This document shows, in pieces, positions 28,229 through 58,904 of a stretch of DNA of 64,000 bases. The notes beneath the pieces are model-generated. The model was not told the DNA's origin. It saw nothing but the letters and a program-made list of their open reading frames with translations, and did not search any database. The position numbers and the translations under genes are program-made. The stretch comes from Saccostrea cucullata (Eukaryota), in the NCBI RefSeq assembly GCF_032062105.1, contig NW_026921687.1, forward strand, positions 1 through 64,000, written 5' to 3'. The number at the start of each line of letters is the position of its first letter. Position 1 is the first letter of the stretch.

Positions 28229-31200
28229 ATGAGCACCGACTTCTGTACCATACCATCAATTGTACAGAGCGCCAGGGATGGCGACATTGAACAGGTGTAT
28301 GAACTGTTACAGAACGGAGCAGACGTGAATTCCGTCAATTATCTGGGGCAGACGGCCTTACATATGGCGGCAACGGGTATGATTTGATGTGGACGATTGA
28401 TTAATTAAAGAAAAGTGAAGATTACTTATAATCATTGTATTGTTTAAAATATATACGAAATAAATATTGTTAGACAATTCTTTTTAAATTTGCATAAAAT
28501 TAAGGTTTGAAATAAAGATAATTTAACAACTGAAAATAAAATGAAATCGGAAGGATCATTGATACTTGTCCGATTTTACAATGATCACCACAATTTGTTT
28601 TGAAGCTGGAAATGAAAATCTTGCTGGGGTTCTAATAGAATCGGGCGCAGAGTTAGAGGTCACGGACAGGAAAGGTCAAACTGCACTGCACAAAGCTGTC
28701 TTCAATCTCCACATCGGCACAGCGAGTCTCCTGCTAAAGAAAGGCGCGGATCCAGAAGGGAGTCCAAAAAATCTCCACACCCCTCTCCACATTGCAGTCA
28801 TGCATAAGAATGTGGACCTTTTACAGGTATTGTGTGGACATCTTAGCTAAACAAACGTCATCTGAAACGTCACGTTTAAACTCACCAAGATTTTTTTGTG
28901 AAACACTATATACTAAGTACTTGTACAATAAATTTTCATGAAAAGAAAATTAAGGAGAGAGAGAGGGATGGGTGGATGTTTTCTTTTTCAAGCTTATTGA
29001 GGGGGAAAAGAGGAATCCTGTTAGCTAAAAAATTCATGTCACATTAATAAATTGTTTACGTTGACAGCTTTTACTGGAATACAATGCGAACACCACCGTG
29101 TACTTCAGCAAGGACCGACCCTGCGCAGTGGACTTCCTGCTTTCTACTTCCATAGACAATCGTGTGTGTTTTGACATGATAAAATCTCTGTTACAACATG
29201 GCTGCGACATTGACTATAACCATGTGACATGTCAGACAATGACGATGTCGCCTCTTTTTGCTTGTATCTTCTATCTGAAGTCGGCGGCCATATTGGTTAT
29301 GCTGTACGAGTTTGGCTGTGGGAGGTGGAAGTTTAACTGGAGAGATGACCGCCTGTACGACAGGAGGGAGGACAAGGAGTTCCTGAAGGAATTTGTTCAA
29401 CAGAAAGCTGGTATGTGAAGGACTTTGTCCGAGAGAAAGCTGGTATGTGAAGGACTTTGTTCGAGAGGAAAGCTGGTATGTGAAGGACTTTGTCTGAGAG
29501 AAAAAGCTGGTATATGAAGGACTTTGTTCAAGAAAAAGCTGGTATGTGAATGAATTTGTCTGGGAAAAAGCTGGTATGTGAATGACTTTTGTACAAGAGA
29601 AAGATGGTATGTGAATGACTTTTGTACAAGAAAAAGCTGGTATGTGAAGAACTTTGTCCAAGAGAAAGCTGGTATGTGAAGGACATTACAAGAGAAAGCT
29701 GGTATGTGAAGGAAGTCCAAGAGAAAGCTGGTTTTTCGAAGGACTTTGTCCAAGAAAAAGCTGGCATGTGGAGGAATTTGTCCAAGAGAAAGCTGTTAAA
29801 TGAAGGACATTGTCTGAAAGAAATCTTGTATGTGAAGGACTTTGAGGGTAATCTGGTATGCGAAGATATTTGTCCAAGAGAAAGCTGGTATGTTAGAACT
29901 CTGTCCAAGAAAAAGCTGGTATGTGAAGGAATTTGTCCAAGATAAAGCTGGTATGTGAAAAACTTTGTGGAAGAGAAAGCTGTTATATGAATGATTTGTC
30001 TGAAAGAAATCTGGTATGTGAAGGACTTTGTCTGAGAAAAAGCTGGTATGTGAATGACTTGTCTGAGAGAAAGCTGTAATATGAAGGACATTTTCTAATA
30101 GAAAGCTGGTATATGAAGGACTTTGTATGAGAGAAAGCTCTAAGAGTAAGCTGGTATGGGAAGAACTCTAAGAGTAAGCTGGTATGTGAAGGACTCAAAG
30201 AATAAGCTGGTATGTGAAGGACTCTTAGATTAGGATGGTATGTGAAAGACTCTAAGAGTAAACTGGTATGTGAAGACTCTAAGAGTAAGCTGGTATGTGA
30301 AGACTCTAAGAGTAAGCTGGTATGTGAAGACTCTAAGAGTAAGCTGGTATGTGAAGGACTCTTAGAGTAGGATGGTATGTGAAGGACTCTAAGAGTAAGC
30401 TGGTATGTGAAGACTCTAAGAGTATGTGGTATGTAAAGACTCTAAGAGTAAGCTAGTATGTGAAGACTCTAAGAAAAAGCTGGTATGTGAAGACACTAAG
30501 AGTAAGCTGGTATGTGAAGACTGTAAGAGTAAGCTGGTATGTAAAGACTCTAAGAGTAAGCTGGTATGTGAAGACTCTAAGAGTAAGCTGGTATGTTAAG
30601 ACTCTAAGAGTAAGCTGGTATGTAAAGACTCTAAGAGTAAGCTGGTATGTGAAGACTCTAAGAGTAAGCTGGTATGTGAAGGAATCAAAGAGTAAGCTGG
30701 TATGTGAAGACTCTAAGAGTATGTGGTATGTAAAGACTCTAAGAGTAAGCTGGTATGTGAAGACTCTAAGAGTAAGCTGGTATGTGAAGAACTCTAAGAG
30801 TAAGCTGGTATGTGAAGGAATCAAAGAGTAAGCTTGTATGTGAAGACTCTATGAGTAAGCTGGTATGAACAGCAGCAGAATGAAGGAGTAATGAAAGGAG
30901 GAATGGCGAGTGTGGCTTGAAAACCTTGGTAGAAATTTGGGAACGAGTAGTCAAATTAGACATTATAATGCTTAAAAACCAATTGAAATGTTTCCTTAAG
31001 GTAACAAATATATCGGTGGCAGATAATTACCCAAGAAGTTAATTTTAATCCTTTCAGTTAAATTTTGGATTTTCAGTCATTGGGGATGATGATCCAGTAA
31101 TGATAATGGATGCTTAAACAATAATAGAGTATAAGATGTTCTTTAAGCAAGACGACTTGTAGCGTATGACCAGAGACATACCTATGATAGACCTCTAATA

Positions 31201-31409
31201 CATGTCTCTGGTATGACAACATTATTAGTTTTGTATCCATTTGTGAATAAAATCTTTTATTTTCAGCCTCCCCTCGCTCTTTGATGTCTGCTTGCCGAGT
31301 GTTCGTGTACCAACGTCTCCAAAAGAAACCCCTCCTTTATGTAAATCGTCTTCCTCTGCCACAAACAATGAAAAACTATCTAGCATTCAATGACGTGGTT
31401 TATTTTTGA
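28229..31409 (+). CDS. Ankyrin repeat and SOCS box protein (ASB-like), 284 aa; exons 28229-28376, 28606-28826, 29068-29410, 31267-31409
   Basis: GQTALHMAA, GQTALHKAV, TPLHIAV ankyrin repeats; C-terminal PRSLMSACRVFV...LPLPQTMKNYL SOCS box; junctions in phase. Confidence 0.88.
29385..30868 (+). repeat. Minisatellite derived from the ASB exon3/intron3 junction; ~32-bp units change to 27-bp units near 30140; roughly 50 units
   Basis: GAAGGACTTTGTCCAAGAGAAAGCTGGTATGT, then GAAGACTCTAAGAGTAAGCTGGTATGT. Confidence 0.93.
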
Positions 31410-31704
31410 GGAAATGTATTGCAAAAGCATCTGTGATTCAGAATCCACTGCTAATAGCCATAGTTATAGTTATGGGAGATGTCTTTGGGCTTCCATTATG
31501 CAGGAATGTTTTTTGTTTTAGGTGTGATCGTTTTATATTGATTTCGTGTCAGTATGCTGTCTGAAATGTATACTTATATTTATAGATGCATTTAGGCAAT
31601 AAATATTTCTGCCCAGTTTAATTTTTTTTAGCTCACCTTCACGAGGCCTGAGAGGGATTTTGTAAATTCCCGTTGTTGGCTTCCTCGTGTACTTAACCCT
31701 CTAA

Positions 31705-32111: not shown

Positions 32112-32563
32112 AAAAAACGAGTTATTTTTTTCTCTTCATACAGTTGTTACATATATATGTACCGCAAGCTTTGTGTTTCTTTGTTTTATATTGAAATATT
32201 ACGTAAAAGTACACGTGGAAGACACGGGAGTGTGTGCTTTGACGCCTGACTTTACGTTCGATAATCTTGTTATTTTCCTATAATATTGTCCACTTCAATG
32301 TCAGAGGCAACAAAACAATACAAGGTTGTCAATGCCAAGTCAGTGCAGTGTGGGTACTATACTTTTAATCCTTAAAATCCCTCTTCAAAACATCATATGT
32401 GGGTTTAGCTTTAATCTGATGATTAAAAGGAAAAGGAATTAAAAATACTTCGATCAGAATTTAGAACGTATATTTTAACTGTGAAGCGATATTCTACATA
32501 GAGGTTGTCGTGTCAGTGAGACAGTGAAAATAAAGTGACGATTGGAATATTTTTTTCATAAAG

Positions 32564-34292
32564 ATGGCCACAAGTCGCCTCGCTCGGAATGTGACTGAGG
32601 ACTATTTGACCTGTACGATTTGTCTACAGCGCTTCCGAGATCCCAGGACTCTGCCGTGCGAGCACACTTTCTGCCTGGCCTGTCTGGCTAACCACATCGG
32701 CGCCTCAGTAGATGACGGAGTATTCGTCTGCCCGGTGGACAAAACAGAAGTCCAGGCCAGCAAAGCAGACGACCCATGGGAGAGCGCGCGAGCTTTCCCG
32801 ACAGACAGTTTGGCGGAGGCGCTGATCAAAGTGGTGGAGGAGGACACGAGGCGAGTGAACGTAAGCGAGGACGGACAGGATCTGAATTTCTTCTGCTTTG
32901 GATGCCAGGTAATGACGAGTGCTGAAAACGCTGTGGAAAATCATCGTCATCCAAATTGTCACTGTGTTAATCTTCAGAAAGCTTATCAACGAGTGATGCC
33001 GGTGTTAATCAATTACAATCGAGAACTGGAAAAGGTTTATCTCAAATCCGAGAAAATCAAACGAGTTGTTACGAATGGAAACGGGATTTCTGAAGCGAAA
33101 CAAGAAGTGTTGGGTGAAATCGGCGAATTCGAAACAAAATTAGACGATTTTTATGCTGGATGCAAAGCAACTCTTGGTGCAATGAAAACAAAGGTAGCAG
33201 AACACGAAGTGAAAAGTGACATGTCGATCAATCACGCAGTTCATGATGAAATAGCTAAGAGATACTCCTCTTTCAATCAAAACTTTGACGACGAAAATGT
33301 TCCAGAGCTCTTGTCTGTGTACCTTTCAGTCAATAAAAAGCTAAAGGAACTTGAAAAGTTTGAAGATTCTCTGCAAATTAAATCACAGAAGTTTCCATTA
33401 CATTTTCTTCCAAATAAACAGTTGTTGAACATGTTGAGAAGCAAACAGCAATGTGGAAAGTTGCAAGTTTCCTCGAGTTCACATTTTAGAGGTCAGCAGT
33501 CGGCAGACGTTGAAGAGTGCAATTATTATGACGTAGCAGCGACGGACAAGTATATCGTGACGTGTGACGGAGAGACGGGACTCGTTCAGCGCTTCCTGCA
33601 CGACGGTTCTTATGTCGATTCCATGCGAGTCGACAATATTTGTCGGATGACTGTAGTTACAGACGATGAAATTGCAGCAACCCGTTTATTCAAACGTAAA
33701 ATTGCCTACATCTCTCTTGGAAAGAAAATGCACATTCGAGATCAAATCAGAACGAAGAAGTCGTACATTGGAATATGTTTGTTGTCAACTGGGGATTTCT
33801 GTGTGTCTTTTTATGATGGTGAAGAGCCACCAGGAATAGAAATTATTTCAGACGAGGGGAAGGTCCTCAAAACACTTCTTGGACACAGGAATCCCGCGGG
33901 GTCCGTCCCTCTCTTTCTCGTACCGATGTTTCTAACATCGACAGTCAGCGATAACATTGTCGTATGCGACTTCACGGACACTAATCACGTGATCTGCTTC
34001 AACGATAATCTGGAACTTCTGTGGTACCAAGGTTTTCCCAGCATGCCCTGTTGCGTGACGTCAGATGATGACGGCATGCTTTACGTGTCTTTTCCCGATT
34101 TGAATGAGGTATTGGTTGTGCACGAGGATGATGGGAAAAAGGTTAAGGACTGTGGTGAAGAAAAGTGATGGCGTCCATAGACCGTTTGCTATTACGATCA
34201 ACGACAGCACACTGGTAATTATCACAGGTGTGAAGACTTATCACTGCACAGCGCACCGGTGGTCTAAGAAGAATTCAAGATCTGTCATATAG
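32564..34292 (+). CDS. Intronless TRIM-like protein (RING, degenerate B-box, coiled coil, NHL-like beta-propeller) with an apparent frameshift at ~34136-34140
   Basis: CTIC...PCEHTFCLAC...CPVD RING; propeller-like repeats; removing one A joins DDG to KRLRTVVKKSDGVHRPFAI...* (34292). Confidence 0.82.
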
Positions 34293-36830: not shown

Positions 36831-38830
36831 CAATTAAAAAATTTTATACACATTGAAGGTATTTTTTCTTCAGATTGAAATCTGTTCCTATATAATGATA
36901 TCAGACACTTGCTCTTGGTTGGCAATGTCTAAAGAAGATGTACATGTAGTAATGTTTATCAAATGAACACAAAACAAAAACACCTTTATATTTTACTCAT
37001 CATTTTAATTATAAACTATGTTATTTAAACACTTAATATGGAAAACATTAAAATATCACAGATAAGACAACATTAAATAAAAAAGCTGAAAATATTCATT
37101 CAAAATAGTATATGTATAATTGAAATGCCTGCAACTATAAATTCAAAAAAAAAACAAAAAAACAAAAATTCAGCATGGCAGTTAAAATGAATTTTCCCTA
37201 AAAAAAAACCCGTCCCACTTGTACATTATTGACTATGTATTTCTGATATATTTCAGCATTTTACATTCCCTAATATTAACATACCAACAGTCTTGCAAAG
37301 GACTTGCAAAACCATACTATATTTCTCTATCCATGGATATATCTTACTTAAGTTTCTTTTTAAAAACCGAAGAGTTCCACAAGAAAGGGGTAGTAATTGT
37401 ATTCTTATATGGAATGTAGTTTTATCTTTATTACTCTATAAGGTCAACCCTACATCCTATCTATTACTTACAAGCAATAAATATGTCTATGAATTCCAAT
37501 AAAACTTAAATACAAATAATAATGTATATTTCAGATCCTTCCAAATCAATTCTCATTAAACATTTAAAAAATTCTTTTTTGGTGAAGCAAGTTTCATAAT
37601 CAGCAAGTAAAAATAATATCATTCACAGCCTTATATGTATATACCACCTAAAGTTAAGCTTAACTTTACAACAGTTAAATTCTTCATAATTGTAAAAATA
37701 TTATCTAGAACTAAATGCTCCCCTTGATTATTATGAACCTATATAGAGATAACAACACTGAAAGCCCTAAGATCTGTCTGTCTGTGGAATTCTCTGTTGT
37801 TTGTTCTCAGGATCAAGGCCTGCATGTGTTACCTAGGAATGGATGGATGAGGTAGGGCAGTAGCTATGAGAACCAACCTTAAAAAAATCACAAAATTAAT
37901 TCATGAGTTGAATTGAACAACAAAATATCTTGTTGGTATATGTAATCAACTGTACACAAAGTTTCTTCAATATAAATGAATTCAAAGTGGAAACCTCATT
38001 TTGTACATGTTTTAAGTAACTATAAATAAAATTGCTAAATATTTTTAACAGAGATCCATTTGAAATTTAACTTTGGTTTGTATTTGAATTAAGAGATATG
38101 TTACTAACAAATTCAGAAGCATCAGCTAGATTAAAACCAAACAGCTTTTCTGCTTGATATAAATTACAGGATTTGGAAATCTTGACTTAAGGTCAAGATC
38201 TAGTAAATAACTTGAGACTAATTTTTTGGTGCTAGATCCATTATGACGTCATAATCAATTTCAACTTTCTTTTTCCCGTACTTTACGTCTTTAGCAGAAT
38301 TATGTAGAAAATAGGGTATTTTCATGTCATTCAATTTGAAATCATGAAAAGTAAACCGGATACCTATATTAAATTTGATATTGATTTAAAGAAGAGGCCA
38401 TGAACATACTAATTACCGTTTTCTGAGAGACTGTTGGCAATCTGGATACATTTCCTTTGCCGAATAAGAAAAAAACTCCCATATTCATGACTGGTTTTCT
38501 TAATTTTTCATTGAAAATGACAGTTTAAGATACAGTTTTGCATCTTGTTTACCTACAAATTATGCCCCGAAACATCTTATGTGACCAAGCTAAAGTTGTA
38601 AAGCATCAATGAACCAATTTATTTCTCAGATTTGATAAATCTGTAGGCACCTTTCATTTACTAGATCTTGACCTTAATGTTCTAATTAATTTGTGATGAT
38701 AATGAGAACAAGATATCAGTACATGTACTGCAGTGTCTTGTTCTGGGAGGATATGATTAGTTTCATTACAAATATAAATTGTTAGCTTCATTATGAATGT
38801 ATACAGATACAGTGCTCCCTCTGTTTTTAC

Positions 38831-41800
38831 CTTTCTTTTCCTTCTTTGCTGGTTTTGGCACCGATTCACCAATCAGAGCAAAGCATAAGTTCTTATAATC
38901 TCCTGAAATGTCATCCTGAAAAAATCCAAGGAATGAAATTTCCACACATTTCCAATTTAAAAAAAAAACACAACAATCCAACAAACAGTACACCAAGGGT
39001 GTACTTCTCCAAGTGTATCTCATGGAGAAGGGCTTTAAAGTCAGCCAGAGTGAATGTCTATCTATATTTTACCGAGGGCTGCAATGAAACAATTGATGGT
39101 AAGAGAATGGATGTGATTGGCCAGAATGAATGAAGGCCCAGAAACTTTGTATAATGTTTATGAAATACAGCTGCTGAACTGTTGCATTATGGTTTTATAT
39201 AACAGTTTTTAGCCATCCAACAAAAAATCAAAACAAGCAAGTTTGTTAATATAAAGTGAAGTATAAAGGGTTGGGAAGTGGACAACATATACAAAGTAAA
39301 TGGTTGAAAAATGTGTCTTGAATTAGGGAGAAAATGGAAATTGATCAATATTGGAAAGTGGAGAAATTCACTCCAACCGTGCACAGAAAATCTTGCGCCG
39401 TAAATTGCACCACATTTGCATTGCGGGATCTGTACGGTTATGGTCAAAGACTAATATATAAAACCATAACGCTACAGTTCTGCAGCTATATGAAATACTG
39501 CACTTGAATAAAAAGCTTGAGACTAATATATAAAACCAAAACGCTACAGTTCTGCAGCTATATGAAATACTGCACTTGAATTAAAAGCTTGAGACTAATA
39601 TACACTACTTACAGCTAGGAACATGGCCAGGGTTTGTTTGTACTGCTTCTGGAATTCCTCCTTGATCTGCACCATGTCTACTTCACAGCGGGATACAATG
39701 ACTCGACACAGACGATCGTCATCCGTCCCGAGACCCTTCATTGATTTATACAACTCTGTGGCAAAGTGTGAAGCCTTACCTCGAATACACCGCACTGTGA
39801 AGAAAAAGAGCAATTAGCTTTTATAATACTCACATTTATATTTATCAAACAGAATGATTTAGATTTTAAAAAATAAACTTTAATTGAAATCTAATCCTCT
39901 TAAAAAAGGGAAGAGACATATTTGCAAGAATAGATTACTAATGTTCTTATGTTCTTTTGAACACAGTTTTTTGCTTCAAATATTTCAAAGAGACAAATAT
40001 GAATTATCCTTATTTCAATGCTCCAAGTACCAAAATCTGGTGTGGAAGCCAAAATTATAATTTATAAACGTTTATGGATTAGACTAAGTCATCATTTACA
40101 AAGAATCTCTATTTGCATTACCAGTGTATGTCCCACATACCTACAGCTAGCATGCCCTTCAGTAAATCCCCTGACATTTCACTCTTTAACGTGTCTTCAA
40201 TATCTTTGTTGGCCAGTTTAGCGTACTCCTGGAATGTCGCACGCAGCTGAGCATAGCTCCTGGAGACCAGAATGACGTTAAAGCGTGACTCGTCAGTCCC
40301 CCATTTCTTCTCTCCGGCCTCGTAGATGGCCTGAGCGTCCTGTTTAGCTTTGTTTCTGTCAAACTCTTTGCTTTCGTCCCTGTTGGCCTGGAGTAATCCT
40401 ATCAGTAGCCGTTTGAAGTGACCCGAGGTATCCCCAGAAACGTGCTCCTCCAAGTTCTTACCATACACTGAAATAGGGTCAAAGTCATATAATAAGTTAT
40501 ACTGAATGTAGGTCAAGACTATAATGTTAAAAAAATGCATATAACTGACTTAACACAATGTAATTACAAAGTTTACAAAAAATATAAGTTTAAATTCCAT
40601 TAATATTGTTATTTTAAAAAAAACAAAACAAGAGGCCCATGGACCACATTGCTCACCTGAGCACTGTGGCTAGGAAAAAGTAGAAATTGGTTTATTATTG
40701 AATAGTTTAAATCCAAAAGTAGTCCCATGACCAATCATGGCTTTGCTATTCTTGATAAGATGGTTTTTAAAGAATTTTCCTATATACAGCTTACTCCACT
40801 TATATTGAACTCGCTTATTTTGAAATTCCGCTTATATTGAATTAAAAATAAATCCCCAGTCTTTGACTCTTATATTCTTTGCATTGAAATAACGGTTATA
40901 TTGAAATCGGCTATATTGAAATTTGGCTTATATTGAAGCCACTAATCGGTCCCCACAGGTGATAATGAGTTGTTTTCATAACGGTTATAATGAAGTACTC
41001 CCTGGCGGCTGTCATTACGGTTGTTGACAGAAACTATGCCTGATTGACCAGTTGATATAAATAAGTTTTCACCTTATGTGTTTTTATACTGCATGCTCTT
41101 ACGAAATAAAATTGCTCACTGCTAAATTCTTTGTTTCCATGTATATAATACGGAAGTATTTAAGGCAACATAGTAACTAACCCCCAAAGATCTAAAAAAA
41201 AAAAAAAAACTGAAAAATTAAATACGAACTGTTAATGGTTAATGATAAACCTTAATTCGGAATAGCTAAGAGATCAACCCGAGTACACTTACGATGACAT
41301 ACATGCAGCGTTCAGCAGTACTCAACAGTTTGACATCGTGATTTTTCTCCAAAATGTAAATCAATGCGATCGAGGAATAATAATGAAGTTGAAGATTGTC
41401 TTGTCTTATCGATAAAAAAGAAAGAAACAATTTTATTTAAACTTTCAAGGACTAATATTCCATGTAATCTGTACACTATTATAGGTAAACGATGAGACAA
41501 AATTAATTTGTTCGGGTTTGTTCTTTATTTTAATATCGGGATTGAACTTTTAATAAAAAAAATGGCCGCTTCACGATTTCGCTTATATTGAATTACGGAT
41601 ATATTGAAATAATTTGCATGGTCCCCTGAATTTCAATATATCCGGAGGAGGCTGTATGTCTAAATAAAACTTTGATTGGCAATTGTGGCCCCACCCTACC
41701 ACTGGGGATCATGATTTGAACAAACTTGAATCTGCTCAACCTGAGGATGCTTCCATATAAATATGATCAATTATGGCTTTGCTATTCTTGAGAAGAAGAT

Positions 41801-42027
41801 TTTTAAAGAATTTTCTTATATATTTCTATGTAAAACTTTGGTCAGCCATTGTGGCCCCGCCCTATCCCCAGGGGTCATGATTTGAACAAACTTGAATCTA
41901 CACTAACTGAGGATATTTACCCTTAAGTTTTATCTTTCCTGGCACAGTGGTTCTTGAGAAGAAGATTTTTAAAACATTCCACCAAAGTTTCATTAATTCC
42001 CAATTATCTCCCCTTGAATGAGGGCGT

Positions 42028-42078
<51 letters not shown>

Positions 42079-42079
42079 A

Positions 42080-42110
<31 letters not shown>

Positions 42111-42161
42111 TGAGAAGAAGTCGAAGAAAATGTGAAAAGTTTACAACAACAACGACGACAA

Positions 42162-42202
<41 letters not shown>

Positions 42203-45200
42203 TGGCTCAGGTGAGCTAAAAAAGCAGCTCTAATTAAAATCTAATGTTTAAAACTAAACAATGAGTTGTACACCTCAAATTTAAATTTTGAATGGACTAC
42301 AGTAATGACATGACAATCAATTGGCCATTACCTATCTGGACAGCTTTAACCACTGTAAATCAGGTTTCTCATATCTGGAGAAAGCTGCTGTATAACTTAA
42401 AAGATACATGCATTTTACGTGTTATTAAAGTCTGTCAATAGATATATAACATACAAGTTTTGTAGGCTTCCTTGAATTTCCTGATCTGTTCGTTTGACCG
42501 AGTACAGATGACCTCGACAAGCACCTGCTCATCTGTTCCCAGGCCCTGCAATAAAGGATACTCATTAGAATGCAAAACTTCAGCATTCAGAGTATAAATA
42601 TTTATATTTCAACAACAGGCCCAAAGGCTAAATGATGGAATGGTAAATTAAAAATTATCTTTTTATTCAATCTGTATGATCAGAATGTGGGTGGTACTTG
42701 TAACATCGTCATTTTGACCTTCATTTTGACTTTTTACCTTGATGGCTTTGTTGAGACACATGGCATCAAAGTTCTCCGGACTCATACACAGACCCCGACA
42801 GAGGACCTTCAGACCCCCACTCAACTCCCCTTCCAAGTCCTTGATTAGGTCCTAAAATAAAATCAATCAAGTCACAACCCTTCTAGATCCTACAGCATTA
42901 AAAATCACTTTAATTCTAGATTTTGTAAGAAGATGGCATTTGGAGGAGACAAAATATTAATTATTTTATGATGTACATGAATATCATCACTACAATTATA
43001 CCTTTCCAAACATTGTTTTGTAAGTTTGAACAATTTCTAGTCTCTGTGCGTTTGATCTGTAGCCCAGTATGTCTATTATGGCCTGTTCATCAGTTCCTGT
43101 TTAATAATGAGGAAATCCATATAAATCTATTCACAGCATGATTTAAGCAAGAACAGTACCATAATCTTAACTAAATAATGAAGTAGGTAATTTGAAAAGG
43201 AAATGCTGAAGCTGATTACACTATATGGTTTTCAATGTGAAATTTGAATTACCAGAAAAATCTATTTATAGATAAATACATACAGAATCATAGATAACAT
43301 ACCGAAGCCTTTCATGGCCTTCCTGAGAGCCTCTGCGTCACTCTCAGCGTTGAAATTCTCCGCCGGTTTTACTGTAGGATCCTCCTGTAAATTACAGAAC
43401 ATGTCTAATGATATTTACACAAATCTTATAATGATCTCATATTGTACAGGCTTTTTTGAAAATTTCAAGGATTTAAAATTTGACTTTTTTCTTTTTTAAG
43501 TTCTACCACTATGTGAATGTTACCTGTGTTGGCCTTGAGAATGACCATTTATTAAAAAAGTGTCCAGTTTAAAAGAAGTTCACACAAAAAGCATATTTAT
43601 ACTGTCACTTTTTTTATATTTGACTTTGCTGATTTAATTCAATGGTAACCTGTTTGTTTTATTTTACTTTACCTGGACTTCTTCAGATTCCATTCTGACC
43701 TCTTCATCCAATTCTTCCTCAGTTTTGTTTTTGACGGCCTCCACAAAACCCTTACCAGCTAAAAATAGAAAACCGAGAAAATAACATCACAAGTACAGAA
43801 CCTTTACAAGCTAAACATAGGATGATTTAATCATATAAAAGAAATAGAGAAGTTTGTTTTTATTTGTTGTTTACTGTCCCTCTCCAGAATTTTTCACTCA
43901 TATGGAGACCCTAACACTTGCCGATGGAGAGCTGCATATTTATATTATGGATATTCCACTCTCAGTGCCATTGAACAGTGAGGGAACGTTTTTGTGCCAA
44001 CACCTCCTCAGTATATATGAGTTAGACTTACATTTGGAGGCTGTGTTTGACTTATACGAGTTAGACTTTTTTAGTGCCAGCACCTCCTCAGTATATATGA
44101 GTTAGACTTTTTTTGTGCCAGCACCTCCTCAGTATATATGAGTTAGACTTTTTTTGTGCCAGCACCTCCTCAGTATATATATGAGTTAGACTTACATTTG
44201 GAGGCAGTGTTTGGGGGAGGTCCTCCCACCACGAGGGCCAGAATAATGTTCCTATAATCCCCAGAGATGTCATCCTGTCAAATAAAACAGACACTTATCA
44301 TCATCTTATAAACAATTCAAGTAGGGGGATTTAAAATACATCTATATACAGACTCATCTTACGGTGTAATCTCCAATTAGACAAGTTAATAAAATATTAA
44401 AGATTTTTAAATCACCAGGAGAGGAGTGTGTATACTTACAGCTATGTACTGCTCCAATGTTTGTCCTGTCATTTTTTGGAATTCCTCCTTGATCTGGACC
44501 ATGTCGATTTCACATCGCGACACGACGACTCGGACGAGAGTGTCGTCGTCCGTCCCGAGACCCTTCATCGTCTTCTGGAGTTGGTACGCGAAATGAGCAG
44601 CCTTATTCCTCACACATCGCACTGAAAAATATATATACAGGAATTAAACATATCGCAAGAAATTTTCAATCTTTGATTTTGTTTTCCTGTTACTTTTCAC
44701 TTTTTATCTTGTTACTTAATTTAGCTAATGAATGCATGTTTTAAATAACAAATGCTGTTTTTATTCACATAAATCCTAGAAGGAAAATTTCTGTTATATT
44801 ATTCAAATATTAAAAAAAAGGGAATTTTTTTTCATTTATTTATAACATGTTACACTATTTATAGGTGACATAATATGACACTGTATATTTTACCAATAGT
44901 CAACATTCCCCTCAGTAGGTCTCCTGACATTTCACTCTTCAGCGCCTCTACCATGTTCTTCTTGGAGATTTTCTCATATTCGTCAAACGTGGCCCTGAGC
45001 TGGGGATAGCTGCGGGAGGCCAGAATGACGTTAAATCGGGACTCGTCCGTGCCCCATTTCCCCTCGCCGGCGTCCAGTAGTGCTTTAGCATCTTGTTTGG
45101 CTTTGTTACGGTCCACTTCCTTACTGTCGCTCCTATTGGCCTGAACCAGCGACACTAGTAATCGCTTCAGATGTCCCGACGTGTCGCCTATAATGTCTTT

Positions 45201-48200
45201 CTCCAGGTCCTTATTGAATACTGTAATTAACGAGCAATTAGAAACTTATCAACTATGATTTCTTATGAAACTGTATTTGCAAAACTCTTGCATCCTTATA
45301 AAAATCATCTAACAGATTCAAATTTACACCGATAGAGAAAAAGATATTTATATTGGAAATATTTACGTGTTTTATAAGTTTTGATGATTTCCTTGATCTG
45401 GGCGTTAGATCTGGTACACAAAATCTCTATCAACACGTCTTCATCTGTCCCTAGGCCCTGTAAAACAAAACAAAAAGTGCTTAATGTTTACTGCTTATTG
45501 TTTCCATGTATTTTACAGAATCTGAAGTATTATTTCTTACTTATAGAGGGAGCTAGAAATATCATATTGTCTAAATTGAATTTTAGAGTTTGTTTTCAAC
45601 TCATCTTTAAAAAATTGTGATCTAGAGCTAGTATTCCAAATATTCACATTTTACCTGAACAACACATACACTCAGACTTTGCAGTAATCAATCACCCTAT
45701 TCTTTGTAAAACACTATCGCATATTCATTCCCCGCTGTTTTTTTTTTTTTTTTATATTTTACCTTGATGGCTTTACGGAGCTGATTTATATTTTTACCTT
45801 TTTTGGAATGCAGAGTTGTTTTATATATTACCTTGATGGCTTTTCGGAGCTGATACGCGTCAAATTCAGCCGGGCCCATCATCAGACCCTTACAGGCGTC
45901 CAGGTAATGTCCACTCAGTTCACTCTTCAACTCCTCTAAAAGGTCCTGTGTCAGAAGGTCAAAGGTTAAATAAATATAGACAAGGTAAAAGTTGTCACTT
46001 GATAAAATAAAATAAATATGCTTAAAACTAACTCTACATAGGTTATGTATTCCTACCTTTCCGTACATGGTTTTGAATGCTACCCTGACTTCCTGTCTCT
46101 GAGGATTAGATCGATAAGCCAGGATATTTGTTATAGCGTCTTCATCAGTCCCTGTGTAAGATATTAAACAAATTACTGTCACATACTAGTATAACTTCAG
46201 TCATAATAGAACACAGCAAAAACATAGCACTTCATGACACACTTAATTGATATCACTAAACTCAACAAAATGGAGTCTTTTTGTTATTTCAACCTTTAAT
46301 GAAGTTTAAACAGTTAGTTTGCGACCATTAAATGAATATTAACAGGTTCAAATAACAAATTAAGAGACAGTTATTCCTTAATTTATGAGCACGGAAAAAA
46401 ATATTTTTCTCTCCAGCAATTAAAAATCTCCCAGGATGGTAAACAAATATTATAGTTCATGCAGCAACTTCCTTTTATCATGTAAATATCAAATGACATC
46501 GACATAATTAAGTTGTTTTTCGTACCTAGCCCCTTCATGGCACCCCTCAGTACCTCTTTATAAGTGAGCAAAATTTTCGAATTTGTTCAGCATTAAATTT
46601 GTATTATACGCGAGAATTTAATTTTCGCAAGCACATTGTCCCCTCCACCTAAAGGGAGACAACTCTGTTAAAACTCATCTCAATACATTGCTACATTGTT
46701 TGTAGAGGAATATATACTTTTCAATTATTTCCCAATGCATATGTGGATGGTTAGAACTTTCCAAAACACAGGCACAAAATGGACATGCTTATTTTAAATG
46801 TGATTAATAAAATATTATACCGGAAGATCCTCTGTTTCCATTGCAAAGTAGGGGTCAGATTTGGGGGGTGTTTCCTTCTTTTTCTTTCCGTTTGAGGGAG
46901 GGGGAGTGGGGGGTTTCTTCGGTTTGGTCTCCACTTTCGGAGGTTTGCGTAGCGATCCTCCTAAATAAACAAAATATAGCAACTCTGTAACGGGTTCACG
47001 ATATATCAAATCAAAATGTAAAGTTAACTTTTAATTTAATGAAATAAAGCAACTCTGTGATGAGTTCATAATTTATTTATTAAGTCAAAATATAAGTTCA
47101 TAGTTTATAAATCAAAATATCAAGTGAACTTTTAATAATACATCTAAAATCCCACCTTATAAAATGCTGTTTATAAAATTAAATAAAAAATTTTAAAAAT
47201 GCGTTTTGTTAATCTGATTTTAAAAACATCTAAAAATTTCACCAGGAAATGTTTAAAATAATATATTATAAATATCAAAAAGTTTTTCTACAAAACATAA
47301 ATAAGGATAAGTTATTACATGCACAGAAATGACAACTGACAGAATATATATATTTACTATCTTGATTACATCACTAAAAATTTTGTCTTCTTGTTTAAAG
47401 CTTAAGACAAAGTATGGCACAGTTGGACATTATGCAGTGTCTGTTTATGAAATGTTTGATATTTTTGTCTGTCTTCACTCACTTGGCACGCCCGGTTTTC
47501 CCATCACTAGAGTAATTCTATATGCATCTCCCTCATCTTCAAACTTGGCTTCATGCATCTGGAAAAGAAAAAATAATAAAGTTTAAGAATTTATTTCTTA
47601 TCTTATAAAACAGTGTCTTCTTATATTTCTGCTAAATTGTTTGTGAAATTTTGCTAATATTTTAATCCTGAAAAAATAAATGGAAGAATCTGTAATCATT
47701 CTGTAAAATAATAATACTTTGATCCATTTTAAGGGGAAAAAAATTTAAAAACCCTTTGAATAACTTATATAATCTATATATATATGTAAATTAATGATAT
47801 ACAAGTTTTTATAAATTTAAGTCTTCTATGGTCGTTGATTTTAAACAAGAAAAAATAACAATAAAAAAAACCCTCTACTAATAAACATTAAATACATACT
47901 CTTCCAATTTTGGGTTCAGCCACTCTTAGTCGAAAGTCCTTGTTATTTTTCGCGAATTCCAGCATATGAGCGTAGATGTGTTGTATATTTCCTTTGAAGT
48001 CCCCTGTTTTTAAAAAAAATTAACATAAGATTATTAATTTTCTTTATGCATTGAAAAGTAATCTTAATTGAAAAATTTAACAACAAATTATAACATGTTT
48101 AAAAAAAAAATATGAATAAGATAGCTAAATTTTGAGAAATCTAATGAATCACTTTAGTCTTTATATCTATAAACAGATGAATCTCTTTTATTTTTTTCCA

Positions 48201-51118
48201 ATATGACATGACTGTTAGAAAATATTCCCTACAATCATGTATCTACTTGTTTACCATTTCCGGGACTGACGGCAGATAATTCCGGATCTTTAGGGGGAGG
48301 GGGAAGCTCGATGGCCTTCGGTGGCTCCTTTGGTGGTTCCTCGATAGTTTTAGGTCGCTTGTTCATCATCTGACGTAAGTCTCCTACCGTCACGTGACGA
48401 TTTTCAGGGTTACAGTTCTACAATGATGTTATATTTTGTATAATTATGTTGATTAGATGGGATAGTCTTCATTAATTACCGAGGTATCTATGTCAGATTA
48501 TTAGAACCTTGTTTAAACAAAAATTAAACTGTTTATCACAATGCCACCAGTATTAACATAACCTTAACCTAACTGACAAGAAATCATGACTTTGACTAAA
48601 ATCGGCTTTCTACTTCTAATAGGTTAATGTCAAAGTAATTGACAAACACAGAGAAAGAATCAGAAAGCAAAATCTCTATAAAATCTGAAGTATTATTCTT
48701 GTCCCAAAGAATACCATTGACAGAATAAACTTTGATATCTGTATTCACAGAGTAAATGTTTGGAATATTTTCTATAAATGTAAGATCATAATTATAAAAG
48801 CTTAGATCTATCCAATAGTTACATTTTTCGTTGCTTACACTGATCATATTTTCTGTGAGGAAGCCCGTCTGTGTGGGGTAGGGGTTGCTAGGCACCGGGA
48901 CGCCAAATGTGACCGCCCCGTTACTGGCATTCATCCCGGGCCAGGATCCAGGGGGAGCGCCCCACACGTTTATCTGGGTACCAGAGTAGTTGGTAGGGTT
49001 AAACGGGCCCTCGGGAACAGGGGGCTGTGGGGGACCTATAAAAAAATCAGATCATGTCACGACAATCAGAAAACATTGCATTAAAAATGACAAATTATAT
49101 GAATATTATTTCAATTTATTGTGAAAAAGGCATTTAATTATCATATTCAGATATATGCGAGAGTAGGTATAGAATTTTTAGAAGATTTTTATTTAATTTT
49201 CAAGAAATTCCAAAAAAAAATTATTCTTTAGCATATTCATATTGAATGTCGTTGCATGTTCTGTCTATTCACATGCATCAGAACTAAAACATGTACCTTT
49301 TCTTCTCAGTCAATTAAAATACTGGCTCAAAATAAAATTAATGGCTAATTAAGACTTACTGTGACGTCCATCCTCGGCTCCAAAGTTATCAAAGGTCTGG
49401 CTGCTGGCCCATGCCTCCTTAGGGGACCGCCTTAGAGAGGATCGCAGAGGGGACTTAGATCTCACTGGAGATTTACTCTAATAAAACAAAAATAAAATCA
49501 TCAAAACACAGAATATATAAAACAACAGGGACAAATGACAATTATACAAAAATCATATTGCAATTCTTTTGCAAACCCTGGTACATTAGTTAAATTTAAA
49601 AACCTTTACAGGTTAAATATTTTTCCCTCTGTAGTCAGTTGGAAGGAAGTCTGACAATTTGTTTAACAAGTTTTTGAAAATGAGTTAATTAAGGTATGTA
49701 TAATCGTAGTTTTACTTTTTAAGTTTCCTCCTATTTTTGAGTGTGTGTGTGTGTGTGTGAGGGAGTGTGAGTGTGTGTGTGTTACCTTTTTGGGTTTCCT
49801 CCTGTTTTTGACAGTGGAAGCGCTAGTCCAGGTTTTCTGTGTGGTGTCAGTGTCGAGGTCTGAGGTGTCAAAGAAGCTTGTGTAATCGTCGGTGGAGTAG
49901 CAGTCCGTGGTGGTCTCGGCGTGGCTGAGCTGTCCAGTCTCCTCCACCATAAACTGCTTTGTCATCACGTCACTCTCCCGGATTCCATCTCTGGAAATCA
50001 ATAATTTATTACATCAGTTTATCTTATCTTACTGTATGTCTGATACAATGTAAACCAACTTTTATTCGAATATCCAAGAGTTTTATGTCCTATAATTCAG
50101 AAAAATTATCGTCACAAACCATTTAATATTTGGCTTTGTATTTGTAGGGAATGTTTTCTCAGTGACAAAAATTAATTGTTTGATTTCAAACTGACAAATC
50201 AGGAATAAGAGATGAAGCGAATAATAGTTGCTTTGCAGTATCTTATTCAGAAAGTGAATAGCTTATACTTGTACAAGACTACCTATATATGTATTTGTTA
50301 TCTGTGAATTTGATTCCAATTAATATATAAACATGCAGTAAACATTGTTACAAACACAATACATTTGTGCCAAAGTGTAAATGGCACATACATTAAACAG
50401 TTAAAAGTGTTGATTTTCTTCATCCCGTAATAATTCTGAGAGTACAATCACTTGTTATGTACGTGATTTGTTTTCCATTGCTTGTTTTATTGTACCTTGT
50501 AACAGCTACTGCCTTCAATGTACGTTTTCCAGCTTTAAGTGTGAAAGGAGCCTTGTATTTGAATGTGATCTCGCGTCCTCCAATTTTACGTTGAAATGGA
50601 GACGGCTTTGTTCCATCAGAAGTGAAATATATTTTACAATCAGGAGTTTCTAAAAAAAAAATTATTAATTAATTTTAGATTCAACAAGAAGTCTACTTAG
50701 TATAATTAATGACAAATATAATGGTGCATACTTTGTTACTCTAATCTTTGCAAAAATAAAATGTTAAAAAATCATCTTTTTGGTAGAAAATGTTTTCGAT
50801 ACTATTGCTAATTCAAACTTTTATTACGATTTAAATTAGAAATTTTCTTATGATTTAAATAAGACCATGTCTAGAGTTAAGTTTTTATAACAAGACATGG
50901 ACCCACCAAATTATCTCCACATGGAACAAACTTGTAATTTTTTTGATATCCACAAAATTAATTGTCCACTTCATATGAAAATGATTCCATAGTATGCATT
51001 ATTTACCTGTGGTGATCTCTATGAGTGTGGTGGTGTCTATTTTATTTGTGGCGAGGCCCGGAATATGCCGCCTGACAGGCGTAATCAAGGGGGGACAAAC
51101 TGCCCCAGCACTGGGCAT
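38831..51118 (-). CDS. DZANK1-like N-terminal region fused to eight annexin repeats (~1100 aa). Coding exons: 51118-51007, 50649-50496, 49990-49786, 49477-49360, 49035-48839, 48417-48255, 48003-47900, 47558-47483, 46960-46821, 46648-46526 (disrupted), 46151-46057, 45945-45832, 45457-45367, 45220-44894, 44621-44440, 44274-44196, 43758-43673, 43384-43303, 43096-43002, 42851-42738, 42545-42455, 40467-40141, 39794-39613, 38915-38831. It ends either by read-through to the stop at 38766 or via a small exon at 37832-37813
   Basis: ccaccATG at 51118; GT-AG junctions in phase throughout except the disrupted exon; eight GxGTD repeats; N-terminus [10 protein letters not shown]...[20 protein letters not shown] and [18 protein letters not shown]...[11 protein letters not shown]. 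Confidence 0.85.
40628..42223 (-). mobile_element. HINE element in an annexin intron
   Basis: 5' TTTTTAGCTCACCTGAGCCAAAGGCTCAAGTGAGC, GTC/GTT microsatellite, ~165-bp units, 3' CAGGTGAGCAATGTGGTCCATGGGCCTCTTGTT. Confidence 0.87.
40787..41654. mobile_element. Tc1/mariner-like MITE nested in the HINE
   Basis: TA flanks; imperfect TIRs CAGCTTACTCCACTTATATTGAA / CAGCCTCCTCCGGATATATTGAA; subterminal TTATATTGAA repeats. Confidence 0.75.
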
Positions 51119-52487: not shown

Positions 52488-52650
52488 CTGAATAAAATCT
52501 TTTTGCCACAAAAACCTCTGTTTTGTGATGTTTTCAGTGTTGTCAAGCCGCCAAATATACCTCCACAAGCAGAAGAGTTCCTCTCACCTGCCGGAAGTTC
52601 GCACATTGAACTTCCTTTTCGAGCCATCGACAGCAGAACAAACACAGCAT
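52488..52650. promoter_or_regulatory. Probable bidirectional promoter: NACA TCT/5'TOP start and non-coding exon 1 (~52611-52650, +); first non-coding exon of the annexin gene (-, donor after 52488)
   Basis: CTTCCTTTTC at 52611-52620, CAT|GTGAGT donor at 52651, ETS/GABP motif CCGGAAGT at 52591-52598; - strand CAG|GTATAG donor. Confidence 0.68.
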
Positions 52651-52987: not shown

Positions 52988-57121
<4,134 letters not shown>

Positions 57122-57636: not shown

Positions 57637-58016
57637 TAAATGATTCCAGGTAATTTTCCTGTTAGTTTTGAGGTGAGCTTGAAGGTGTTGGCAACTGTAA
57701 AATGCAAGGCTTCAATCAATTTCTAAGGTCTTTGCGATCATGGGGCATTTTGCTTATCCCCCCACAAACATTTGAGAAGGAAAAGCCATGGCTTGACAAT
57801 AATCTACTCAATATGATGCTTGATTCCAAAAAGGTGGAGACCAGCTATAATGGAGGTATTTTAAAATAGTAAATTATAGTTAACTGTGTACTTAATAATG
57901 ACAAGTTAGATGTGATTTCCAACTTCATGCAGATTGGTGGATTATGCCCAAATATCCAGATATAATCCAAATGGTACTATTCTCAGTCAATCTTGGACTT
58001 TCAGTTTGGTGTGGTA

Positions 58017-58224
58017 CTGTGAATCAATTTTTATACGCGAGAACTTTATTTTCGCATAATTATAAGAGACAGCGTGCTCGTGAAAATTTAATTCTCGCAT
58101 ATAATAGTATTCTTTACGATTATATAGAACAATAACCACAATTCGCAAAAATTTTGTCTCGCTAATCAAGAGTCAATTACTATCTCGCGAAAATAAGGTG
58201 TCGCTAAAGTTTAGTGATGTACAG
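58017..58224. mobile_element. MITE with TA TSD
   Basis: TA-CTGT...TTATTTTCGC ... GCGAAAATAA...ACAG-TA. Confidence 0.75.
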
Positions 58225-58904
58225 TATTCTGGACCTTGCCAAACTGGAGTCGGGAATTTACAGTCTTTCATTCATTGAAATATACATTGCGACGAATGTC
58301 AACGACTGTAGAAGTGATCCAATGATAGCTACGACAAAAATTTGGGGCTTTGGGCTTTTCTTCGTTGCCAACATCAATTTAAAGTTGTTGATTTTATTAA
58401 TTTCTTATTCAAAGACAATCAATTCGCCATTTGAGAGACCTAGTGACAGAAAGTCACACCCTAATGAAAGTCCAAGGTTAAACTGAGATTCGTACTAAGA
58501 GAGTTATTAACCTTTTCATAAATAAGAATATCCCTTATATTATTATTAGAATTATTAGAGTATATGGGATATTTCTTTTTTTTTTTTTATAACAACGAAC
58601 GATTTAAAACGTCAAGCGCATTTGATGTTAAATGGAAAAAATCCCGTGTCGAAACGTATCAATTTTTTTATGATTACAATAAAATTTGATTCAGAAGTAT
58701 TAAATGTTATTCAAAGAATCTTGTATCTTAAAAAGTCTTGGAGTCTATGTAAAATAATCACGAGAAATATTTAGGGCATTTTTAAGACAATATGTCAGTG
58801 GAAAAAACAAGAATATTGATCATGGGAATAATGGAGGGTGAACCAAACGGTTTTATGGGAAGGGTAACCCTAGACTAGACTTCTGTTGGTTTAACTTCCG
58901 GGAT

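What the first reader, a model, noticed from the sequence alone, without database searches (positions are those of the whole stretch)
38831..51118. Chimeric gene: DZANK1-like domains fused to an eight-repeat annexin
Seen: nine in-phase exons (423 codons) lead into the annexin core with no intervening stop or terminal exon. They encode [53 protein letters not shown]...[37 protein letters not shown] and [51 protein letters not shown]. From memory these match two conserved blocks of DZANK1 (the N-terminal Fn3-associated-like domain and the SPG.G..R..DHI.AHL...AEPRMG block). The zinc ribbons are replaced by Ser/Pro-rich linkers and the ankyrin repeats by annexin repeats. Known: vertebrate DZANK1 works with NINL and dynein in ciliary/photoreceptor vesicle transport; annexins bind membranes in a Ca2+-dependent way. 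Inference: a Ca2+-regulated membrane adaptor for ciliary or dynein transport. I know of no description of this architecture.
Basis: partly seen in the sequence, partly recalled or inferred. Interest (0 to 1): 0.85.

Follow-up and report, generated by a model that had tools for sequence, protein, structure and literature searches.

The report
Ancient DZANK1-annexin fusion gene in oyster
This oyster gene joins the front half of a cilium-base protein (DZANK1) to a calcium-dependent membrane-binding protein (annexin); the fusion is real and shared by molluscs, several worm phyla and probably sea stars, and it may act as a calcium-controlled tether between ciliary microtubules and membrane, but this role is untested.

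Summary
The fusion is real and old. The window holds a 25-coding-exon gene (51118-37864, minus strand), publicly labelled 'annexin A6-like'. Its first 423 codons carry two DZANK1-derived folded blocks with DZANK1's intron positions; the oyster's true DZANK1 lies elsewhere. Intronless contigs from Magallana/Crassostrea sequencing runs carry the whole reading frame. Relatives with 4, 8 or 11-12 annexin repeats form one clade across molluscs, annelids, brachiopods, nemerteans, flatworms and Priapulus. A sea-star protein that keeps DZANK1's ankyrins plus four annexin repeats looks like the intermediate.

A missed bridging exon (46648-46526) is needed, and in this assembly it is corrupted by two repeat-like patches with a stop (assembly error more likely than null allele). 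The NINL-adaptor idea is weakened, because NINL binds the zinc ribbons that the fusion lacks. Best guess: a Ca2+-switched tether between ciliary-base microtubules and membrane (about 45%, inferred only). I found no paper describing the DZANK1 link, but one key annexin-architecture paper was unreadable.

The parts
52511..52566 (-). part of a 5' non-coding exon (exact ends not fixed)
   Evidence: 5' ends of four Magallana-type mRNA contigs align here at 82-84%
51007..51118 (-). coding exon 1 (start codon at 51118), start of the DZANK1-type Ig-like (Fn3_assoc) domain
50496..50649 (-). exon 2, core of the Fn3_assoc domain; 154 nt, as in the oyster's DZANK1
49786..49990 (-). exon 3, last strand of the Ig-like domain, then Ser/Thr/acidic linker
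49360..49477 (-). exon 4, Ser/basic disordered linker
48839..49035 (-). exon 5, family-specific near-invariant motif (N-Y-S-G-T-Q-I-N) and the Q-x-G-F-L-T block
48255..48417 (-). exon 6, short helix, Pro-rich linker, start of the DZANK1 middle block
47900..48003 (-). exon 7, helices of the DZANK1 middle block; 104 nt, as in the oyster's DZANK1
47483..47558 (-). exon 8, beta-hairpin ending the middle block
46821..46960 (-). exon 9, Lys/Pro-rich linker, ends in phase 0
46526..46648 (-). exon 10, bridging exon with the first annexin helix; corrupted in this assembly (123 nt instead of 82, in-frame stop)
46557..46637 (.). two patches (46637-46601 and 46582-46557) resembling a high-copy ~200-bp dispersed repeat, with 18 nt of normal exon between them
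44196..46151 (-). exons 11-16, rest of annexin tetrad 1 (95, 114, 91, 327, 182, 79 nt)
43673..43758 (-). exon 17, acidic linker between the two tetrads
38831..43384 (-). exons 18-24, annexin tetrad 2 (82, 95, 114, 91, 327, 182, 85 nt); same exon pattern as tetrad 1
37864..37877 (-). exon 25, last codons and stop; ends a short Lys-rich, aromatic tail

Best explanation
Identity (about 97% sure): one gene that arose when a duplicate of DZANK1 was joined to an annexin gene, no later than the protostome ancestor. In molluscs the annexin part was then doubled to eight repeats. The protein has an N-terminal Ig-like domain, disordered linkers with one family-specific motif, the DZANK1 middle block, and two annexin tetrads with all eight calcium-site motifs intact. 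Mechanism (inferred, about 45%): the DZANK1-derived blocks dimerise and dock at the ciliary base or transition-zone microtubules, as DZANK1 does. The annexin cores on flexible linkers bind acidic membrane when Ca2+ rises. The protein would thus be a Ca2+-switched microtubule-to-membrane (or vesicle) tether in ciliated cells, working without NINL. The broken exon 10 is a local defect of this sequence: assembly or polishing error about 65%, recent null or rescued allele about 35%.
For: Single mRNA: intronless 4.1-4.3 kb contigs with the full 1110-codon frame, indexed in 38 blocks of the collection, map collinearly on the window's exons. RNA reads or contigs of a near relative join exons 1-2, 4-5, 5-6 and 7-8. 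Purifying selection: 252 synonymous against 29 non-synonymous codon differences to S. echinata. DZANK1 descent: sequence; shared introns after aa 37 (phase 1), 88 (2), 316 (1), 351 (0), with equal 154- and 104-nt exons; both blocks fold with pLDDT mostly above 90; nearest Atlas structures are DZANK1. One clade, support 100/99; head-to-head NACA kept in oyster, Lingula and Owenia. Calcium motifs in all repeats. For the mechanism: a DZANK1 dimer with LC8 is assigned to the outer A-tubule of the bovine transition zone (bioRxiv 10.64898/2026.06.11.731632), and DZANK1 localises to the basal body and microtubules (PMC4617706). All named carriers except Priapulus are spiralians or an echinoderm, groups that from my own knowledge rely on motile cilia.
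Against: No localisation, interaction or tissue data for any member. The preprint's text does not say which DZANK1 residues touch tubulin; that the retained middle block is the dimer is my inference. The TQT motif and following helix, probably the LC8-bound part, have diverged in protostome members. No strict RFX X-box upstream in the oyster gene or four orthologs, but none in oyster DZANK1 either, so this test is uninformative. An S. echinata isoform lacks the first 230 residues. The exon 9-10 and 10-11 joints were not listed in reads laid on this window.
Confidence: 0.45

Rival explanations
1. Non-ciliary annexin: the protein does ordinary annexin work (Ca2+-triggered membrane repair, vesicle aggregation, cortex linkage), and the DZANK1 blocks serve only as a dimerising or scaffold head.
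For: All calcium motifs intact; eight-repeat design parallels vertebrate ANXA6; zinc ribbons, TQT motif and ankyrins lost; isoform without the Ig-like domain; no X-box.
Against: Both DZANK1 blocks and a new near-invariant motif have been kept across six phyla, which suggests specific partners. No member was seen in arthropods or nematodes, within the limits.
Confidence: 0.35
2. One reading: a Ca2+-regulated cargo adaptor that couples membranes to dynein through NINL and/or LC8.
For: DZANK1 binds NINL and DYNLL1/2 (PMC4617706). The family-specific motif has a T-Q-I core resembling the LC8 anchor, in a disordered region. The sea-star protein keeps the full TQT motif.
Against: NINL binding maps to the zinc ribbons; the fusions have no CxxC pair. 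By the published LC8 rules, Tyr at -4 and Ser at -3 in the family motif are unfavourable, and the oyster's only TQT is preceded by prolines and is not conserved (PMC6607443).
Confidence: 0.15
3. Two neighbouring genes (a truncated DZANK1 copy and an annexin) wrongly joined, or a dead pseudogene.
For: Direct exon 9 to 46151 splicing is out of frame, and exon 10 has a stop in this assembly.
Against: Full-length intronless contigs in many runs; the same architecture in over 40 proteins; 24 of 25 exons intact under strong selection; an RNA contig of a near relative shows normal annexin codons where patch 2 sits (loose end at 46556).
Confidence: 0.03

Closest known systems
[quoted passage not shown]
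   Same: N-terminal Fn3_assoc Ig-like domain, middle helix-helix-hairpin block, four intron positions and phases.
   Different: No zinc ribbons (the NINL-binding part), no conserved TQT motif, no ankyrins; has annexin repeats and its own invariant motif. A paralog: the oyster's DZANK1 is at G000:C21329:373035-364265.
Vertebrate annexin A6 (the label given to this gene in public annotation, XP_062599097.1)
   Same: Eight annexin repeats in two tetrads joined by a linker; type II calcium motifs.
   Different: 420-residue DZANK1-derived head. Each core scores higher against Hydra annexin XII, A7 and A4 than against either half of A6. Four-repeat orthologs sit at the same syntenic position, and the two tetrads share one exon pattern, so the octad looks convergent.
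Annexins A7 and A11 (long N-terminal tails)
   Same: Annexin core with a long, partly Pro-rich N-terminal extension that could bind partners (from my own knowledge).
   Different: Their tails are low-complexity without folded domains; here the extension holds two folded DZANK1 domains.
Patiria miniata 918-aa 'DZANK1-like' protein (P0258)
   Same: Fn3_assoc domain, no zinc ribbons, middle block, annexin core whose best oyster match is this gene.
   Different: Keeps the TQT motif and the ankyrin repeats, has four annexin repeats, lacks the protostome motif; seen in one species only.

Membership tests
Annexin superfamily | Annexin repeats (PF00191) in tetrads | tested here: met
   Window exons hit PF00191 above cut-off; eight stretches in the S. 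echinata ortholog.
Annexin superfamily | Type II calcium site (G-x-G-T loop plus acidic cap residue) | tested here: met
   Present in all eight repeats of the S. echinata ortholog, which differs little from the window.
Annexin superfamily | Ca2+-dependent phospholipid binding | not testable with these tools
   Needs a liposome assay.
ANXA6 orthologs | Eight repeats | tested here: met
ANXA6 orthologs | Descent from the vertebrate A6 duplication | tested here: inconclusive
   No A6 sequence was in my tree. Indirect evidence is against: about 288 bits per A6 half versus 364 for Hydra annexin XII and 345 for A7; four-repeat syntenic orthologs; mollusc tetrads form their own clades.
DZANK1 | N-terminal Fn3_assoc / CHB_HEX_C_1 domain | tested here: met
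DZANK1 | Conserved middle block (S-P-G...H..H...F...EP..G) | tested here: met
DZANK1 | Double zinc ribbons | tested here: not met
   No CxxC pair in any fusion protein. Mollusc and hemichordate DZANK1-type proteins also have 0-2 pairs.
DZANK1 | C-terminal ankyrin repeats | tested here: not met
   No ankyrin hit in oyster or other protostome members; present in the sea-star relative.
DZANK1 | TQT motif 40-50 residues before the middle block | tested here: not met
   Diverged to Q-x-G-aromatic in protostome members; kept in the sea star.
DZANK1 | Orthology | tested here: not met
   A separate DZANK1 gene exists in the genome; the fusions form their own clade.
DZANK1 | Ciliary-base localisation; binding to LC8 and NINL | not testable with these tools
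   Needs experiments.

The most novel reading that the evidence does not exclude
The fusion arose once, before protostomes and deuterostomes split: a zinc-ribbon-less DZANK1 duplicate captured an annexin, protostomes then lost the ankyrins, and chordates, arthropods and nematodes lost the gene. It forms a Ca2+-switchable link between transition-zone doublets and the ciliary membrane in motile-ciliated invertebrates, a type of linker not described so far.
Probability: 0.25. Interest if true: 0.8.

Novelty: new variant of a known kind. Interest (0 to 1): 0.55.

Why it matters
An annexin fused to parts of a transition-zone microtubule protein, kept across at least six animal phyla, predicts a functional tie between annexins and the ciliary base. 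From my own knowledge, ciliary arrest, reversal and shedding in mollusc gills, larvae and flatworms are Ca2+-controlled, so a Ca2+-dependent doublet-to-membrane tether would be a concrete candidate, testable by planarian RNAi or in sea-star and annelid larvae. The fusion also singles out which DZANK1 parts work as a portable module, which helps interpret the vertebrate protein. It shows that the public label 'annexin A6-like' is misleading for these genes, which include schistosome and tapeworm proteins. If the function proves to be ordinary annexin work, it remains a tidy case of ancient domain shuffling with a surviving intermediate.

Tried and rejected
As the operators asked, the spliced model of the window was never searched as a joined sequence: searches were exon by exon, and stored full-length relatives (P0012, P0175, P0209) stood in for it. 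For the same reason the other oyster annexins were compared exon by exon and were not put in a tree. Rejected: direct splice 46821 to 46151 (out of frame); two-gene reading; decayed pseudogene; A6 orthology as a label. No result: a single-sequence fold of the middle block was unusable (pLDDT 43), so that block was never fold-searched alone; Foldseek on PDB gave nothing at E<=0.001; the X-box scan was uninformative; the taxa of several unnamed sequences (P0032, P0200, P0201, and the outgroup DZANK1s P0077, P0081, P0111, P0122) could not be determined; no annexin exon was found in the hemichordate locus, which included about 10 kb downstream; annexin-core introns did not separate single from double origin. 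Paper searches for annexin with DZANK1, Fn3_assoc or 'double zinc ribbon' found no description; the 'Fn3' hit in PMC10696758 was irrelevant. Fernandez et al. 2017 (doi 10.1515/hsz-2016-0273, on atypical annexin architectures) is not held and may list this architecture.
Full report
OBSERVATION. All have GT donors, exons 2-9 have AG acceptors, and together they give 423 codons without a stop. It is 82 nt in Saccostrea echinata, Lingula, Owenia and the sea star, and its counterpart in the second tetrad of this gene is also 82 nt. In the window it is 123 nt with a stop at 46606-46604. The gene continues to a last coding exon at 37877-37864 and has a non-coding first exon near 52566-52511.

SOURCE. 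The public protein XP_062599097.1, 'annexin A6-like' of Saccostrea cucullata, matches the window exon for exon, including the odd residues in exon 10. The window therefore most likely comes from that assembly. That model steps over the stop with a 56-nt intron (46609-46554), which replaces about 14 conserved residues. I take this to be a predictor's workaround, though it was not tested.

THE BROKEN EXON. Against S. echinata, the exon's two ends and an 18-nt middle piece are near-identical, while two short stretches are replaced by 37 and 26 nt. These patches align in order with a dispersed repeat of about 200-215 bp that has 288 candidate sites in the genome and a full copy at window 58014-58228. 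DNA depth over this bin is about 25,000 against about 130 nearby. An RNA contig of a near relative shows the normal annexin codons where patch 2 sits (loose end at 46556). The other 24 exons have the same lengths as in S. echinata, with 252 synonymous and 29 non-synonymous codon differences, so the gene has not decayed. The contig also has several exact local duplications of exon ends. A mosaic of repeat and exon is what a consensus or polishing error would give; I put this at 65%, against 35% for a recent real lesion. The assembly's own reads appear not to be among the runs found (best share of words 0.21), so this stays open.

ONE TRANSCRIPT. An identical 1110-residue protein of the Magallana/Crassostrea cluster is indexed in 38 blocks of the collection, on intronless contigs of 2-5 kb. 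One 4.3-kb contig aligns collinearly with window exons 1-9 and 11-24, and crosses exon 10 in frame. Reads or contigs laid on the window join exons 1-2, 4-5, 5-6 and 7-8; raw-read depth was low, and the 9-10 and 10-11 joints were not among those listed. The two-gene reading is refuted for the family.

DZANK1 ORIGIN. Exon 2 hits Fn3_assoc. In the genome, the only other matches to it are the oyster's DZANK1 at C21329 and a second copy of its 5' part on C20068. Exons 1, 2, 3, 6 and 7 match that gene in order. Four introns are shared in position and phase, and exons 2 and 7 have identical lengths in both genes. A model of the S. echinata head shows an Ig-like beta-sandwich (about residues 5-108) and a helix-helix-hairpin block (311-370), both mostly above pLDDT 90, joined by low-confidence linkers. 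The sandwich matches bacterial glycosidase accessory domains at Z 10.3 and 8.5, and the nearest Atlas models are DZANK1. There are no zinc ribbons or ankyrins. The oyster's DZANK1 and other mollusc DZANK1 proteins have themselves lost most zinc ribbons. A motif in exon 5 is nearly invariant across the fusions and absent from DZANK1.

DISTRIBUTION AND HISTORY. The architecture occurs with eight repeats in bivalves, gastropods, a chiton, cephalopods and the annelid Owenia; with four in Lingula, two nemerteans and flatworms including Schistosoma and tapeworms; and with 11-12 in a Priapulus model. On the two DZANK1 blocks these form one group, support 100/99. NACA lies head to head with the gene in oyster, Lingula and Owenia. 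Mollusc tetrads 1 and 2 each form a clade, so the doubling predates the mollusc radiation; whether annelids share it is unresolved. No member appeared from arthropods, nematodes, chordates or cnidarians, but these searches were limited by rank, length and shared words.

A CANDIDATE INTERMEDIATE. A Patiria miniata protein has the Ig-like domain, no zinc ribbons, the TQT motif, the middle block, ankyrins and four annexin repeats. It is encoded by a compact 21-exon model with a 292-nt intron before the annexin part. In the tree it attaches next to the fusion group (88/73, not strong), and with a hemichordate zinc-ribbon-less protein it is split from the other DZANK1 proteins at 100/97. Forcing it into a deuterostome DZANK1 group or a bilaterian DZANK1 group is rejected (p 0.008 and 0.033), but pairing it with vertebrates alone is not (p 0.14). 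Of 11 annexin tetrads compared from the oyster genome, its core is closest to this gene's two, at 61-62% against 57% or less. A single origin before the protostome-deuterostome split is therefore favoured, about 60%. It rests on one species, a gene model without transcript evidence here, and an unrooted tree.

MECHANISM. Shown: architecture, intact calcium motifs in all eight repeats, long disordered linkers. From papers: NINL binds DZANK1's zinc ribbons (PMC4617706); DZANK1 binds DYNLL1/2 and sits at the basal body and along microtubules; a DZANK1 dimer with an LC8 dimer is assigned to the outer A-tubule of the bovine transition zone, by model fitting at about 5 A (bioRxiv 10.64898/2026.06.11.731632). 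Inferred: the retained middle block is the dimerising, doublet-docking part, and the annexin cores bind membrane when Ca2+ rises. This gives a Ca2+-switched microtubule-to-membrane tether at the ciliary base (45%). A non-ciliary annexin with a scaffold head is the main rival (35%). No expression or localisation data were available, and the promoter scan was uninformative.

KNOWN OR NEW. It is an annexin by every sequence test. It is not DZANK1, only a paralog-derived partial. The A6 label reflects repeat number: per core it scores higher against Hydra annexin XII and A7. The Pfam pairing is visible in public records and forms an ESM Atlas cluster of 158 members. My searches found no paper describing the DZANK1 link, and two annexin surveys of parasites do not mention it. 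The 2017 survey of atypical annexin architectures could not be read. Verdict: a real, ancient and apparently undescribed fusion of two known families; function unproven; interest 0.55.

Noticed in passing
window 52988 onward, + strand: NACA gene head to head with the fusion gene, an arrangement kept in S. echinata, Lingula and Owenia. Its first coding exon end is tandemly duplicated (94-nt period, 53042-53265) here but not in S. echinata.
   Followed up: partly
window 45751-45854, 43989-44200, 39448-39602, 54381-54532: Further local tandem duplications, some at exon 3' ends; the one after exon 12 is absent in S. echinata. They suggest assembly noise or a duplication-prone haplotype.
   Followed up: partly
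window 58014-58228: Full copy of the ~200-215-bp high-copy repeat, with internal inverted arms in other copies, whose pieces appear in exon 10; abundant in poly(A) RNA reads on both strands.
   Followed up: partly
G000:C21329:373035-364265: The oyster's own DZANK1 seems to keep only one zinc-ribbon exon, and an intron holds about ten tandem copies of a coding-exon end. Gastropod and hemichordate DZANK1-type proteins have no CxxC pair, although the zinc ribbons are the NINL-binding part in vertebrates.
   Followed up: partly
G000:C19775:700219-727987: Three annexin tetrads in tandem with an exon pattern close to this gene's; they are the next closest annexins in the genome. One gene or three was not checked.
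   Followed up: partly
S. echinata ortholog, P0208 and P0211: An annotated isoform starts at residue 231 and lacks the Ig-like domain and the exon-5 motif; C. angulata has an alternative last exon.
   Followed up: no
window 38831-38860 and 37864-37877: Short C-terminal tail rich in Lys and ending in aromatic residues in oysters, mussel and scallop; a possible Ca2+-independent membrane anchor.
   Followed up: no
L035: A nearly intron-free compact eukaryote contig from a metagenome carries a member of the fusion family; organism not identified.
   Followed up: partly
window 40627-42362: The 2-kb intron after exon 21 holds a 166-bp-period repeat element shared with S. echinata.
   Followed up: no
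window 32534-34165 (+) and about 28572-31534: Downstream neighbours, also present in S. echinata: a single-exon RING-finger (TRIM-like) gene and an ankyrin/SOCS-box gene.
   Followed up: no
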